This document shows positions 58,566 through 62,444 of a stretch of 64,000 nucleotides of DNA, piece after piece (position 1 is the stretch's first letter; every line of letters begins with the position of its first letter). The notes beneath the pieces are model-generated. The model saw only the letters and a list, made by a program, of their open reading frames with translations, made no database searches and had not been told where the DNA came from. The stretch is from Asterias rubens (taxonomy: Eukaryota): contig NC_047064.1 of the NCBI RefSeq assembly GCF_902459465.1, positions 6,572,001 through 6,636,000 on the forward strand, written 5' to 3'. Position numbers and translations under genes: made by a program.

Positions 58566-59115
58566 TTCATAAACACCTCACACAGTTTCGCTATTCCTAT
58601 TGGTGGAGAGCGCGTCACGTGGGTGTGTATAAACCTTTGTTTATGACCGGTAAAACGTGTTAATTCATGGGCGTGACACGCGACCTTGCACCTGTTCTTT
58701 TAAGACAGTTTCTTTATTCCTATTGGTCGAGAGCAACAGCTGAAACAGTTGTGCCACACCACTCGATACGCGCGAAGCACAGCATTCCCTTATAAGGAGT
58801 TGTTTACCCGAGGGCGGCGGAGGGCTTTACCATTTCAAAGCTGGAGGGGTGTTGTGTTGAAAGAAATCATTTAACAATTATAATGTTTGCATTTATTTTA
58901 CTTTTTGACCAAAAAGTGATGATGTTTTTGACCGAAAAGGTATTTATGAATGGGAATCAAAGTGTGTTGAATCGGTTTTCAACTAGTGGTTTAAACCCGC
59001 CGAGGCCTGGTTCTTTATAATTTACCTCGACTTCGTCTCGGTAAAATTATCAAGAACCAGGCTTCTTTGGGATTAAACCACTAGTTGAAAACATCTTCAC
59101 CACACATTGATTCCC
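58566..59115. mobile_element. Inverted-repeat-bounded element plus terminal hairpin
   Basis: ttcataaacacct / aggtatttatgaa inverted pair, followed by a ~165-bp hairpin at 58952-59115. Confidence 0.6.
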
Positions 59116-59836
59116 TTATTCAGGGCATATTTAGTGTACATCCGATGTAGGTCACCAGATCTACGCATCATTTGTTTTTGCTCTCCGGAGCCCTCGCCCA
59201 TCTCGGGAAATAGCTAGTGTCTTGTATTTGTTCATGTACTGCTGTTATGGCAATCAAATAGTTATGATAATAACACTATGTACCTTTAAAGCAAAAGTCA
59301 ACCATTGACCGTGAAACTAGCTTGAACATTCAAACTGTTACTGGGATCATTGATAATCACACCGCTTGCTCAAGCGTGTGAATGAAATAGACTAGAGCAC
59401 TTCAACGGACCAATTATTTGAAACCTGATAGTGGCACGGTCCTTTCCGAGAGTTTCAACAACTGGTTAAACCTTTTTGATCATTCCACTCTTGAGTGACA
59501 TTAATGACAGACAATGTATAAGCATAAATGCCCACTATGATTGTCTTTGTTTTGCACCAAGTGTCACATACTCCCAACGCAAAGCACCTGTAATGAGTAT
59601 AGCAGAATACAATGTGATTAAAGCATGGCTGACTGACCATTATTCTAACAAATGATGGGACTATAAAGCGACTGTTCTGGAAAAAAAATGGGTCGTGACT
59701 TGAGCCATGTTGATTTATATATATTTTTTTTTTTTTTTTTTTTAATTTAGAGGATGGGAACTCATCTATGGCGACTTCTGATGAAGGTAAGCAGGTTACT
59801 TATAACATAAAAACAACAAACGAAAATTCTGTTTAA

Positions 59837-60186
59837 AGGGACTGTACACGTTTGATTATGCCTCTGAAAATTAAGTGCAATCTAGAATTACTTGGTGAGA
59901 AGTTCATAAGCTTTGGATGGTACAATGCATTTGGAGAGATGTCCACTTCGAAGTGCTGAAAAAAGGTATTTTGAATCTGAGAAGCGTTACTGACGGTAAC
60001 ATTTCTCAGAAAGTGCGTTTCATTTGCAGATCATTCTTCTGAGGGAACAAACCGCTCAAAACTGTCGGCAATATCGCAAAACCCTTCCACCTTTTGAAAT
60101 AAAATTTTAACAGGTTAGATTTTATACAAACAACTATAGGATTAAAACAAACAGTAGGTTGCACTTAACAAACGTATACAATCCTT
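59837..60186. mobile_element. TTAA-flanked MITE (family-1 relative)
   Basis: agggactgtacacgttt / aaacgtatacaatcctt with TTAA on both sides. Confidence 0.7.
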
Positions 60187-60201
60187 TTAAGATTGGTTGT
60201 A

Positions 60202-60933
60202 TATAGGCTGTCACTCGCTAACGAGTAAGACTATCGGGGGGTTGAGTTTCGAAGTTTAAGTTGGCAAGACTCCTCATGCGAGTATAGGCCAATCCTGGCA
60301 GATGTTTGGCGGCCACAGTATCTGCATTGGAGGGATGCGTCCTCGGGATAAACCGCTCTCTGGTGACGCCGCATCCTCCTAGTCCTCACCTCAGCCTGAT
60401 CCCGAAGGCCTGCGCCATGTGTTTATAGTGCAGCATACGTTGCGCATCTGTAGCGACACTCTCTGGGTTCCAGTGTTCTGTATCCATCGGAGAGCCTGGG
60501 CTCCACAGCTGGAGAACACAAGAACTTCCCCGCAGTGCTCAGAAGAAAGAGAACCCCTTCCACTGAGGTGGTTCCAACCATGCCATTGACCAACCAGTAG
60601 TTCACCTGCCATGAAGGGATACCAAACCACTGCTGCCTGGTTTGGGGATTTGTGGTCAGAGTACACCGTCTCCTAGAAGGGTTTCCTAGCAGGGATAACG
60701 GGCCCCCTCCGCCCGGGTTTTAAATCAGGAGAGCTACCATCCAATGTTGATGAGCCCCTCCCGCCCAGAGCAATCTGGTTTTGGGCGCCAGAAACCCGCC
60801 TTCACACCTCTGCTTACTGTTCGCAACAGGGATCGGAACATGAAGCCAAGCAGATAGGAGTTTGATTAGGAGAGGCTCTTTGTGACGCTGGTCACCCTAC
60901 CCATCCCGACCATCCCAACCCTTTGACCCCCGT
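60202..60933 (-). mobile_element. Non-autonomous, internally deleted RTE-clade non-LTR retrotransposon with 12-bp TSD
   Basis: Direct repeat AGATTGGTTGTA at 60190-60201 and 60934-60945. Minus-strand remnant CRYCGRQTSARIGLYSHEESC (60326-60264) matches the RTE ORF C-terminal CxxC..RIGLxSH motif. RTE-like 5' UTR; no RT core. Confidence 0.85.
60809..60931 (-). ncRNA. Candidate HDV-like self-cleaving ribozyme (possibly degenerate) at the RTE 5' end
   Basis: Manual parse: P1 GGGGGUC/GAUCCCU with a G1-U wobble, P2 UCUGCUU/AAGCAGA, P3 GGC/UCC (one mismatch), L3 UUCAUGU. G1 lies 2 nt from the TSD-defined 5' end. Confidence 0.6.
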
Positions 60934-60991
60934 AGATTGGTTGTAGAACAGCAATTTGAAATGTCGATCATGTTTGGGCTCTTTTAATAAA

Positions 60992-61247
60992 AGACACTGG
61001 ACACTTTGGTAATTGTCAAAGACCAGTATTCTCACTTGGTGTATCTGCATGAAATACCAAACCTGTGGAAATGATGGCTCAATTGGTCATCGAAGTTTCA
61101 TGGGAAAAAACACCCTTGTTGCACAACTTTGTCTTCCAGATGTGAGAAAGTATACCTCTTTCTCAAAAAACCACGTCACTTCAGAAGTAGCCGTTTTTCA
61201 TGAATGAACAACTCTCATTGCTTGTTGCCAAAAGTGTCCAGTTCCCT
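60992..61247. mobile_element. Shortened family-1 MITE
   Basis: agacactggacactttggtaattgtcaaagacc...aagtgtccagttccct. Confidence 0.72.
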
Positions 61248-61576
61248 TTCCGAATGATTGTAAATTTTATTCTTTTTTTTTACGATCATGTTTTGCCTCT
61301 TTAAGCCTGAATGATCGAGCAAGGAAACTTGTGACAATTGTGCCGACGGCTCCTATACGGAACTCTGCCAGGTGTTCAAATTAACAATTCACTCTTCGCT
61401 GCTCCTTCCAAACATTCAATTTAAAACAAAACAAAAGACGAATTCGTTTCCCGCTTCTTTCAGACAGCACTTTAAGCATAAATTACTTACGGTTTTGGGG
61501 TTCCAAAACACAAACAGGTAACGAAATCATATGCTAAAACATTTAGATTTACCGGGATATATGTTTGTGTTTTATA

Positions 61577-61860
61577 AGATAGATAGATAGATAGATAAAA
61601 ATGGTTTATTAAAAAAAAAACTGTCCTCGCAGCACAAAGGCTGAATTACAACAATTTTACATAAATCTAATAAAACAAAAAAATAGTTAAGCCACTCCCC
61701 CAAATTCACGCATTGAAAATTGCACATTGAAATTGAATCAACTTTACTCAGAAAATGGTGTGACAATACAATAAAACAACAGACAGGATTGAAAATGTTA
61801 CAATCAAGAAAAACAAGCAAAAGACCAAGCAAAATCTGAACATCAATTTATAAGTCTTCT
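61577..61860 (-). mobile_element. Probable LINE 3' UTR with (TATC)5 tail
   Basis: Minus strand ...gtaattcagcctttgtgctgcgagg...AATAAA followed by TATC repeats; extent uncertain. Confidence 0.4.
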
Positions 61861-62444
61861 GTGCAATATTTACATCCTGAAAGTTCTCCAATGATAATCA
61901 TTATGATATAATAACAACAAAATATATGGTTTTTTCTCGCATGTTTCGGACAGCACTGAGCCTGTTTGCTTAGACAAAACCCAGAAGATAACGACAAATC
62001 ATATGATTTGTTTTCTTGTTTTCTTCTTTTCTCGTAAGTAAAAAAGTTGTTGGTGTTTGTATTTTGAAATCTTCTATGTATAGTATTTACATATTTTAAT
62101 TCATTTGCTGATTATCATAAGATTTAATAAACATTTTTTTCCCGCTTATTTCAGAAAGCAATGAGCATACAAGGCTATAATAGCACATGTTGGGTAAATC
62201 ACTTCAATGATAAATATTATCATCTACAGGAATTATGTACATGTTTTACAATTCTTCCATGCAATATTCATATCCCAACTTCCTTCGCTGATTATTATAT
62301 TTCACCTTCATACAAAATCAAGCACCCATGCCTTCTTGAGAAAAAAAACATCATTGCTGTCGCGCACTCAAGATCACAATGCATTATTCATTGACAGTTT
62401 CTACTGTTATTTATAACAAGTGGTATTATTTATCCCCCGTGTAG

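What the first reader, a model, noticed from the sequence alone, without database searches (positions are those of the whole stretch)
60202..60945. HDV-like ribozyme fold exactly at the 5' end of a TSD-flanked mini-RTE retrotransposon
Seen: a 12-bp TSD bounds a 732-bp minus-strand element that keeps the RTE 5' UTR and ORF C-terminus but lacks the RT. Its first bases parse as a nested double pseudoknot: P1 GGGGGUC (60931-60925) / GAUCCCU (60834-60828) with a G1-U wobble; a 70-nt J1/2; P2 UCUGCUU (60854-60848) / AAGCAGA (60815-60809); P3 GGC/UCC; L3 UUCAUGU, one base from CPEB3 UUCACGU; then GU as in CPEB3. The predicted cleavage site is 2 nt from the element boundary. Established: RTE-clade elements use HDV-like ribozymes to process their 5' ends. 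Inference: this is a parasitic non-autonomous family that kept the ribozyme. P3 has a mismatch and J4/2 is ambiguous (CAGU or CGAA), so this copy may be dead. It is antisense to the host gene and should not cut that pre-mRNA.
Basis: partly seen in the sequence, partly recalled or inferred. Interest (0 to 1): 0.75.

Follow-up and report, generated by a model that had tools for sequence, protein, structure and literature searches.

The report
Self-cutting RNA heading shortened jumping gene
A shortened, dead copy of a sea-star jumping gene starts with an RNA fold of the hepatitis-delta type, which its relatives most likely use to cut their own RNA free; this is a known trick, here in a stripped-down shape that standard ribozyme models miss.

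Summary
A 720-base minus-strand element (60214-60933) lies between two perfect 12-base target duplications.

In this copy alone the parse is not beyond chance: about 0.35 such parses are expected per window. Its position and its relatives make the case. About 80 genomic copies share the core. In 26 copies with unrelated flanks, similarity begins at P1 position 1. P2, a J1/2 helix and, more thinly, P1 and P3 keep pairing through changes on both sides. The loop-3 letters that matter in CPEB3 are invariant.

The family has no P4 helix and a 106-111-nt structured J1/2. No Rfam model detects it. The conserved candidate catalytic C is 60819 (the CAGU option), not the CGAA C.

The "parasitic mini-family" reading fails. 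The deletion junction is unique in the genome, so this is one internally deleted copy. Its P3 mismatch probably disables it.

In passing: the ~350-nt ribozyme module is shared at 78-97% identity by RTE-like LINEs whose endonucleases are only 25-48% identical.

Cleavage itself was not tested. The scan had already found a different HDV-like ribozyme elsewhere in this genome (s1-150352).

The parts
60934..60945 (-). 5' copy of the target-site duplication (tacaaccaatct)
   Evidence: identical to 60202-60213
60202..60213 (-). 3' copy of the target-site duplication; its first 'ta' may belong to the element's (TA)n tail
60214..60933 (-). Internally deleted LINE copy, 720 nt, single-copy structure
60925..60931 (-). 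P1 5' strand GGGGGTC; predicted cut is 5' of G 60931
60855..60924 (-). J1/2, 70 nt; about 40 nt shorter than in the family (106-111 nt) because an inner hairpin is missing
60907..60912 (-). 5' arm (TGGTCG) of the J1/2 helix (P1.2-like)
60889..60894 (-). 3' arm (TGACCA) of the J1/2 helix
60848..60854 (-). P2 5' strand TCTGCTT (other copies mostly CTGCCC)
60845..60847 (-). P3 5' strand GGC
60838..60844 (-). L3 TTCATGT; most copies have TTCACGT; positions 1, 2 and 6 invariant, position 3 at least 90% conserved
   Evidence: PMC4836649
60835..60837 (-). P3 3' strand TCC; T 60837 breaks the pair that is C-G in 28 of 30 copies
60828..60834 (-). P1 3' strand GATCCCT
60816..60827 (-). 12-nt linker GTTGCGAACAGT in place of J1/4 + P4 + J4/2; candidate catalytic C at 60819
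60809..60815 (-). P2 3' strand AAGCAGA (other copies mostly GGGCAGA)
60639..60808 (-). Rest of the shared 5' module (weaker similarity, 68-nt repeat region in relatives)
60385..60638 (-). Lineage-specific 5' region shared with L038, L003 and (its last 55 nt) L036, where it lies upstream of the APE domain
60383..60384 (-). Internal deletion junction (2-nt overlap); relative to L036 it removes 1,317 nt including the APE domain
60214..60382 (-). 3' tail; includes the C-terminal coding remnant 60231-60389 with a CxxC...H...C motif, and ends ...gacagcctata

Best explanation
The window holds one dead, internally deleted copy of an RTE-like non-LTR retrotransposon of a sea star, inserted by target-primed reverse transcription (10-12 bp duplication).

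Its first ~125 nt are a copy of a ribozyme module that heads many LINEs of this genome. The module is an HDV-like nested double pseudoknot:
- P1 of 7 bp, P2 of 6-7 bp, P3 of 3 bp.
- Loop 3 and the following GU as in the CPEB3 ribozyme.
- A long J1/2 that folds into its own helix, like the P1.2 domain of the mosquito RTE ribozyme drz-Agam-2.
- No P4 helix, only a 12-nt linker.

Inferred mechanism: these LINEs are transcribed as part of longer read-through RNAs. The module cuts 5' of the first P1 nucleotide, using the conserved C that sits four letters before the P2 3' strand. The LINE RNA thereby gets its exact 5' end, which is what new insertions then carry.

The window copy lost the APE/RT region. 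It carries a P3 mismatch and a shortened J1/2, so it probably no longer cuts.

Shown: the anatomy, the family, the 5' boundaries and the covariation. Inferred: the cleavage itself, which C is catalytic, and when the internal deletion arose.
For: Family and 5' ends:
- About 40 BLAST copies, 47 pattern hits against 0 in the reversed control, and 80 covariance-model hits in the genome.
- In 26 copies with unrelated flanks, the 6 upstream positions carry 0.07-0.26 bits and the P1 positions 0.75-2.0 bits.
- For the intact LINE in L048/L034, contigs of the neighbouring repeat break at 1686/1687-1688, the first P1 nucleotide.

Pairing:
- P2 has 3 pairs with changes on both sides (C-G to U-A or A-U). 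Covariation score 0.127 against 0.077 in shuffles, reached in 0 of 500. Cells paired: 91% against 33-54% when the partner is slid.
- The window itself has CTGCTT/AAGCAG where other copies have CTGCCC/GGGCAG.
- P1: G.U becomes A-U or G-C in 10 copies. L097 has GGGGATT/AATCCCT (C-G to U-A) and L098 has G-C to A-U.
- P3: L095 has GGT/ACC.
- RNAalifold, with no guidance, recovers P2, P3 and the J1/2 helix, whose two central pairs read AU 19 / GC 4 and CG 13 / UA 11.

Core letters:
- L3 positions 1, 2 and 6 are invariant and position 3 is at least 90% conserved. They correspond to CPEB3 U20, U21, G25 and C22, which form the metal-binding wobble and P1.1 (PMC4836649).
- Linker letters A, A are invariant and the C at least 90% conserved.

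LINE context and literature:
- Downstream ORFs carry APE and RT, including an open 1084-aa frame in L034.
- Tails are short tandem repeats.
- Homologues include Patiria miniata at 76% and a 'Craniofacial development protein 2'.
- HDV-like ribozymes at RTE 5' ends, helices in J1/2 and P4-less variants are all described (PMC6765202, PMC3774820, PMC4908430, PMC10879173).
Against: - No cleavage was observed. Only assembled contigs, not raw reads, were served.
- No Rfam HDV, CPEB3 or drz model matches at E up to 10, either in the window or in an intact-looking copy.
- There is no P4. The linker GTTnnnAAC could itself form a 3-bp hairpin that would tie up the candidate catalytic C.
- J4/2 reads C-N-G-U, not C-G-A-A.
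- Variation within one genome is small. The P1 shuffle test is not significant (584 of 5000) and P3 is almost invariant.
- One subfamily (L3 TTCCCGT) carries 13 to more than 140 conserved nt upstream of G1.
- Another subfamily (P1 3' strand AAACCCT) has no P1 partner at all.
- In the window, and in L085, two letters 'AC' lie between the flank and G1.
Confidence: 0.75

Rival explanations
1. The module is a conserved, structured 5' UTR with another job (internal promoter, translation start, or binding site for the element's protein). Its 5' end is a transcription start, not a cut. The likeness to HDV/CPEB3 would then be superficial.
For: No Rfam ribozyme model matches. There is no P4, and the J4/2 letters differ from CGAA. 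The P1 covariation is thin. The ~170 nt downstream of the fold are conserved as well, so conservation is not limited to the ribozyme.
Against: All three helices of the double pseudoknot are in the HDV order. L3 and J1/4 are letter-identical to CPEB3, and the invariant positions are the functionally important ones. P2 and the J1/2 helix covary. P4-less and large-J1/2 HDV-like ribozymes are active in other systems (PMC10879173, PMC4908430). A promoter role would not exclude cleavage: L1Tc Pr77 does both (PMC3383444, abstract).
Confidence: 0.17
2. One reading: the 720-nt element is a member of an amplified, parasitic non-autonomous mini-RTE family that kept the ribozyme in order to be mobilised.
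For: Both ends are intact and there is a perfect duplication. Three other internally deleted relatives exist: L036, L038 and L003.
Against: The deletion junction is unique. The junction-spanning query matches only itself over its full length, and 18 other places match one side only. The relatives have different breakpoints. L038 and L003 lack the ribozyme end.
Confidence: 0.05
3. The parse in this copy is a chance match within ordinary 5' UTR sequence.
For: A descriptor of equal stringency is expected 0.35 times per window by chance.
Against: The only hit in the window lies 2 nt from the element boundary. The same helices recur in dozens of copies with compensatory changes.
Confidence: 0.03

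Closest known systems
drz-Agam-2 family: HDV-like ribozymes at the 5' end of RTE retrotransposons of Anopheles gambiae (Ruminski et al. 2011, cited in PMC6765202 and PMC3774820; P1.2 study PMC4908430)
   Same: Lies at the exact 5' end of an RTE-type LINE that has no promoter of its own. Has a large J1/2 holding a helix (P1.2) that brings P1 and P2 together. Presumed role is release of the element RNA from a co-transcript.
   Different: There is no P4 helix here. The core letters resemble CPEB3. The Rfam models, which to my knowledge include the drz-Agam families, do not match. The host is an echinoderm.
CPEB3 ribozyme (mammalian intronic HDV-like ribozyme)
   Same: L3 UUCACGU followed, after P1, by GU. 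G1.U closing pair of P1. 3-bp P3. 4-nt J4/2 beginning with C. The CPEB3 sequence is from my memory; its residue numbering is consistent with PMC4836649.
   Different: CPEB3 has a 7-bp P4, a short J1/2 and J4/2 CGAA. It is a single-copy intronic element, not a transposon head.
Minimal HDV-like ribozymes (drz-Mtgn) and theta ribozymes of gut phages (PMC10879173)
   Same: The P4 domain is missing and replaced by a short linker. The catalytic C is the first letter of J4/2.
   Different: Those come from metagenomes and phages, are short overall and have a short J1/2. This one is in an animal LINE and has a 106-111-nt structured J1/2.
Pr77/L1TcRz hallmark of trypanosomatid L1Tc/ingi elements (PMC3185411, PMC4035085)
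   Same: A 5' ribozyme-bearing module is shared by several different retrotransposon families of one genome, including non-autonomous ones.
   Different: Pr77 is 77 nt and also a promoter. The families that share it belong to one clade. Here the sharing spans LINEs with 25-48% APE identity, and the module is ~350 nt.
R2 5' ribozyme (PMC3774820)
   Same: HDV-like fold with a long, variable J1/2 at a LINE 5' end; processing from a co-transcript.
   Different: R2 is specific for one site in 28S rDNA and uses a restriction-like endonuclease. In many species it cuts upstream, within 28S.

Membership tests
HDV-like (delta-like) self-cleaving ribozymes | Nested double pseudoknot with strands in the order P1-P2-P3-P3'-P1'-(P4)-P2' | tested here: met
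   P1 7 bp, P2 6-7 bp, P3 3 bp in that order. P2 covariation reached in 0 of 500 shuffles. A few two-sided changes in P1 and P3. RNAalifold recovers P2 and P3.
HDV-like (delta-like) self-cleaving ribozymes | Cut site at the first nucleotide of P1, which becomes the 5' end of the product | tested here: inconclusive
   Genomic 5' boundaries of 26 copies fall at P1 position 1, within about 1 nt. RNA ends could not be read, because only contigs were served. The TTCCCGT subfamily keeps upstream letters.
HDV-like (delta-like) self-cleaving ribozymes | Catalytic cytosine as the first letter of J4/2 (PMC10879173) | tested here: inconclusive
   A C four letters before the P2 3' strand is at least 90% conserved (window 60819). 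With no P4 the junction is not defined, and that C could pair with the linker's first G.
HDV-like (delta-like) self-cleaving ribozymes | L3 with the U...G reverse wobble and a C that pairs with J1/4 (P1.1) | tested here: met
   L3 positions 1, 2 and 6 are invariant and position 3 at least 90% conserved. J1/4 G and U are each at least 90% conserved. These correspond to CPEB3 U20, U21, C22 and G25.
HDV-like (delta-like) self-cleaving ribozymes | P4 helix | tested here: not met
   Only 12 nt lie between the P1 and P2 3' strands. P4 is dispensable in minimal drz (PMC10879173), so this does not exclude the class.
HDV-like (delta-like) self-cleaving ribozymes | Match to curated covariance models (Rfam HDV_ribozyme, CPEB3, drz families) | tested here: not met
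   No such hit at E up to 10 in window 59000-62000 or in L045:1380-1620.
HDV-like (delta-like) self-cleaving ribozymes | Mg2+-dependent self-cleavage, lost on C-to-U | not testable with these tools
   Needs a bench assay.
RTE-clade LINE | One ORF of about 1000 aa with an APE endonuclease followed by RT; element of about 3.2-4 kb | tested here: met
   Met for the elements that share the module. L032 has APE and RT. L034 has an open 1084-aa frame. Homologues are 1040-1060 aa on 3.3-4.3 kb contigs. Not shown for the window's own lineage, where only an APE is seen, in L036.
RTE-clade LINE | 3' end made of short tandem repeats, no poly(A) | tested here: met
   (GAC)n in L032. (TA)n in the window's tail family.
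RTE-clade LINE | RT groups with the RTE clade in a phylogeny | not tested
   Only indirect support: homologues named 'Craniofacial development protein 2' and a fish/turtle/flatworm spread. No reference RT set was at hand.
Non-autonomous retroposon family (mini-RTE) | Several copies with the same internal structure and different insertion sites | tested here: not met
   The junction-spanning query matches only the window copy.

The most novel reading that the evidence does not exclude
The ribozyme is an active HDV-like ribozyme of a new build (no P4, large P1.2-type domain). It sits in a ~350-nt 5' cassette that is passed among at least eight deeply diverged RTE-like LINE lineages of one animal genome, most likely by template switching onto another element's RNA 5' end. 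5' processing would then be a shared, exchangeable module rather than an inherited part of each LINE.
Probability: 0.45. Interest if true: 0.6.

Novelty: new variant of a known kind. Interest (0 to 1): 0.45.

Why it matters
HDV-like ribozymes at LINE 5' ends are an established way for promoter-less retrotransposons to define their RNA.

This case adds an echinoderm family that every curated model misses. It combines a P4-less core, known so far from metagenomes and phages, with a large J1/2 domain. Searches built on the current models therefore undercount such ribozymes in animals.

If the cassette sharing holds, it shows that the 5' processing module moves between LINE lineages. That bears on how LINEs acquire and replace 5' UTRs.

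For the window itself the practical result is simple: a dead, single-copy transposon remnant.

Tried and rejected
- Rfam scans at E up to 10 on the window and on an intact-looking copy gave no ribozyme family.
- RNA evidence: all runs offered were assembled contigs, not raw reads. Laying four RNA runs on L048 showed contigs over the element and none bridging the 5' junction. Contigs break at repeats and cannot show RNA ends. This gave no verdict on cleavage, only support for the DNA boundary.
- Cross-species copies: the metagenome scan gave two contigs, L090 and L091, one of them nearly identical to genomic copies.
The homologues found (Patiria and others) could therefore not be inspected for a ribozyme.
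The TTCCCGT subfamily's upstream piece could not be followed.
- A semi-global aligner set-up for mapping P1 gave nonsense. It was replaced by local alignment with ungapped extension.
- The P1 shuffle test is not significant, and the J1/2 shuffle is uninformative because GATC and GGCC are palindromes. The explicit pair types are reported instead.
- The AAACCCT subfamily was examined as a possible strong P1 covariation. No partner strand exists within 1.5 kb, so it is not counted as support.
- Host-gene strand: ORFs of 90 aa or more in 40-64 kb have no Pfam match, and no earlier notes cover this window. Left open.
- No consensus of the element was built, and no copy is proposed for revival.

Full report
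**What is in the window**

Read on the minus strand, tacaaccaatct occurs at 60945-60934 and again at 60213-60202. The 720 nt between them begin ac|GGGGGTC and end ...gacagcctata.

Fourteen other copies of the 3' part end at the same ...gacagcctata followed by a variable (TA)n run and then unrelated DNA. The 3' boundary is therefore real, and the duplication is 10-12 bp.

- P1 60931-60925 / 60834-60828.
- P2 60854-60848 / 60815-60809.
- P3 60847-60845 / 60837-60835, with a C.U mismatch.
- L3 TTCATGT at 60844-60838.
- J1/2 of 70 nt.

**Is the parse more than chance?**

Alone it is not. A descriptor no stricter than what this copy satisfies (P1 7/7, P2 7/7, P3 at least 2/3, L3 U.C..G., J1/2 up to 120 nt) finds one site in the real window, this one. 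It finds on average 0.35 per 128 kb in resampled sequence. Rfam finds no HDV, CPEB3 or drz match at E up to 10. The case rests on position and on relatives.

**The family**

The window's assembly has 417.6 Mb in 150 contigs. It is probably a sea star: a 'starfish metagenome' run holds part of the sequence, the closest named homologue is from Patiria miniata, and earlier notes of the scan say the same.

- BLAST finds about 40 copies of the 5' part.
- A 19-mer of the core with up to 2 mismatches gives 47 hits against 0 for the reversed control.
- A covariance model of the 3' core gives 80 hits.

Most copies read CTGCCC-GGC-TTCACGT-GCC-GATCCCT-GTTnnnAACnGT-GGGCAG(A), preceded 106-111 nt upstream by GGGGGTC. 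P3 is thus perfect in the family. The window's TCC is a private mutation, as is C-to-T in L3.

**Five-prime ends**

In 26 copies with unrelated flanks, the six positions before P1 carry 0.07-0.26 bits. The P1 positions carry 0.75-2.0 bits.

For the copy with an open 1084-aa frame (L034/L048), contigs of the neighbouring, highly abundant repeat run up to L048 1687-1688 and then diverge. That is exactly before A-GGGGTC.

**Pairing**

- P2: three pairs change on both sides (C-G to U-A or A-U). This includes the window's own CTGCTT/AAGCAG against the common CTGCCC/GGGCAG. The covariation score is 0.127 against 0.077 in shuffles (reached in 0 of 500). Cells paired are 91%, against 33-54% when the partner is slid.
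- P1: variation is small. G.U becomes A-U or G-C in ten copies. L097 has GGGGATT/AATCCCT and L098 has a G-C to A-U change. The shuffle test is not significant (584 of 5000).
- P3: almost invariant. L095 has GGT/ACC.
- J1/2: RNAalifold, which cannot draw pseudoknots and was given no hint, returns P2, P3 and a helix inside J1/2. That helix's two central pairs read AU 19 / GC 4 and CG 13 / UA 11. The explicit arm pairs are GATC/GATC, GACC/GGTC, GGCC/GGCC and, in the window, GGTC/GACC.

The window lacks an inner hairpin of J1/2 but keeps this outer helix.

**Core letters**

In the 30-copy alignment:
- L3 positions 1, 2 and 6 are invariant and position 3 is at least 90% conserved.
- Positions 4, 5 and 7 vary.
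- In CPEB3 the corresponding U20.G25 wobble holds the catalytic metal, and C22 forms P1.1 (PMC4836649).

After P1 comes GU, then a 12-nt linker whose letters T3, A7 and A8 are invariant and C9 at least 90% conserved.
- The candidate catalytic C is therefore 60819, giving J4/2 = C-N-G-U.
- There is no P4. P4-less HDV-like ribozymes are known from metagenomes and phages (PMC10879173), and J1/2 helices that activate RTE ribozymes are known from mosquito (PMC4908430).
- A caveat: GTT...AAC could form a 3-bp hairpin that would occupy that C.

**The elements**

Downstream of the module lie APE and RT domains (L032), an open 1084-aa frame (L034) and short-repeat tails such as (GAC)n in L032. Homologues are 1040-1060-aa proteins on 3.3-4.3 kb contigs from many animals, one of them named 'Craniofacial development protein 2'. 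This fits RTE by architecture. No phylogeny was run.

**The window copy**

- Its last 183 nt belong to a tail family that is mostly 5'-truncated.
- Its reading frame is the last 44 aa of a 152-aa frame in L036. L036 has an APE domain just upstream.
- Relative to L036 the window lacks 1,317 nt.
- L038 and L003 carry different deletions.
- A query across the window's junction matches only itself.

It is one internally deleted copy, not an amplified mini-family. Whether the deletion arose during reverse transcription or after insertion cannot be told.

**Seen in passing: a shared cassette**

The ~350-nt module is 78-97% identical between copies whose APE domains are 25-48% identical. Over 80 pairs there is no correlation (Spearman rho 0.02). 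This points to exchange of a 5' cassette among at least eight lineages. It recalls the Pr77 hallmark of trypanosomatid elements (PMC4035085).

**What does not fit**

- The TTCCCGT subfamily has 13 to more than 140 conserved nt upstream of G1, and this piece was not found apart from the ribozyme. Two units 1,483 nt apart hint at head-to-tail arrays.
- An AAACCCT subfamily has the core inside a repeat of more than 2 kb and no P1 partner.
- The window and L085 both have 'AC' before G1.

**Limits**

- No raw RNA reads were served.
- Cleavage itself is untested.

**Verdict**

The ribozyme reading is well supported at family level, with about 0.75 confidence. This copy is probably inactive. The 'parasitic family' reading is rejected. 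It is a new variant of a known kind. The scan had already reported a different, 74-nt HDV-like ribozyme on another LINE of this genome (s1-150352).

Noticed in passing
L041-L064 (for example L048:1330-1686 minus strand; L049; L043; L050): The ~350-nt 5' module (ribozyme plus a stretch with 68-nt repeats) is 78-97% identical between LINE copies whose APE domains are only 25-48% identical. Over 80 pairs there is no correlation (rho 0.02). It looks like a 5' cassette exchanged among at least 8 LINE lineages.
   Followed up: partly
L070-L084 (for example L084:1-140): In the subfamily with L3 TTCCCGT, 10 copies share at least 140 nt upstream of G1 and 3 more share only ..ttacttttatcgt. The upstream piece was not found without the ribozyme. 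Two units lie 1,483 nt apart on contig 7, which may mean head-to-tail arrays cut into units by the ribozyme.
   Followed up: partly
L101-L119, L122-L126: About 16 copies have a diverged core (GGT TTGATGC GCC AAACCCT) lying ~900 nt inside a repeat of more than 2 kb with 47-nt tandem repeats upstream. No 7-nt partner for the P1 3' strand exists within 1.5 kb. It is a relic or a re-used core.
   Followed up: partly
L048:1687-1840 and 1950-2057: The DNA flanking the intact LINE is another repeat with very high summed contig depth in the RNA libraries (up to ~6,500 against ~10 for the LINE body).
   Followed up: no
L032:3775-3830: Directly after the (GAC)n tail of the LINE comes GGCGTGTCATGGCCGAGCGGTTAA..., which reads like the 5' half of a tRNA (Ser/Leu type). 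It could be a tRNA gene or a tRNA-derived SINE used as target.
   Followed up: no
window 59001-59066: A long, near-perfect hairpin gives weak matches to the mir-606 and mir-605 models on the two strands (28.6 bits against a threshold of 80; E 0.004). It is probably an inverted repeat of a transposon end.
   Followed up: no
L052, L053 upstream of G1: Two copies of the LINE (contigs 103 and 7) sit directly behind a (CCCAACCT)n-like microsatellite and are 99.7% identical over the module. This is a duplicated locus or a microsatellite-targeted insertion.
   Followed up: no
L090, L091 (JACSEG010001905.1, JACSEG010009818.1): Two contigs filed as metagenome carry the module. One is ~90% identical to the sea-star copies and is followed by APE/RT remnants. 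This is probably echinoderm DNA inside a metagenome record.
   Followed up: partly
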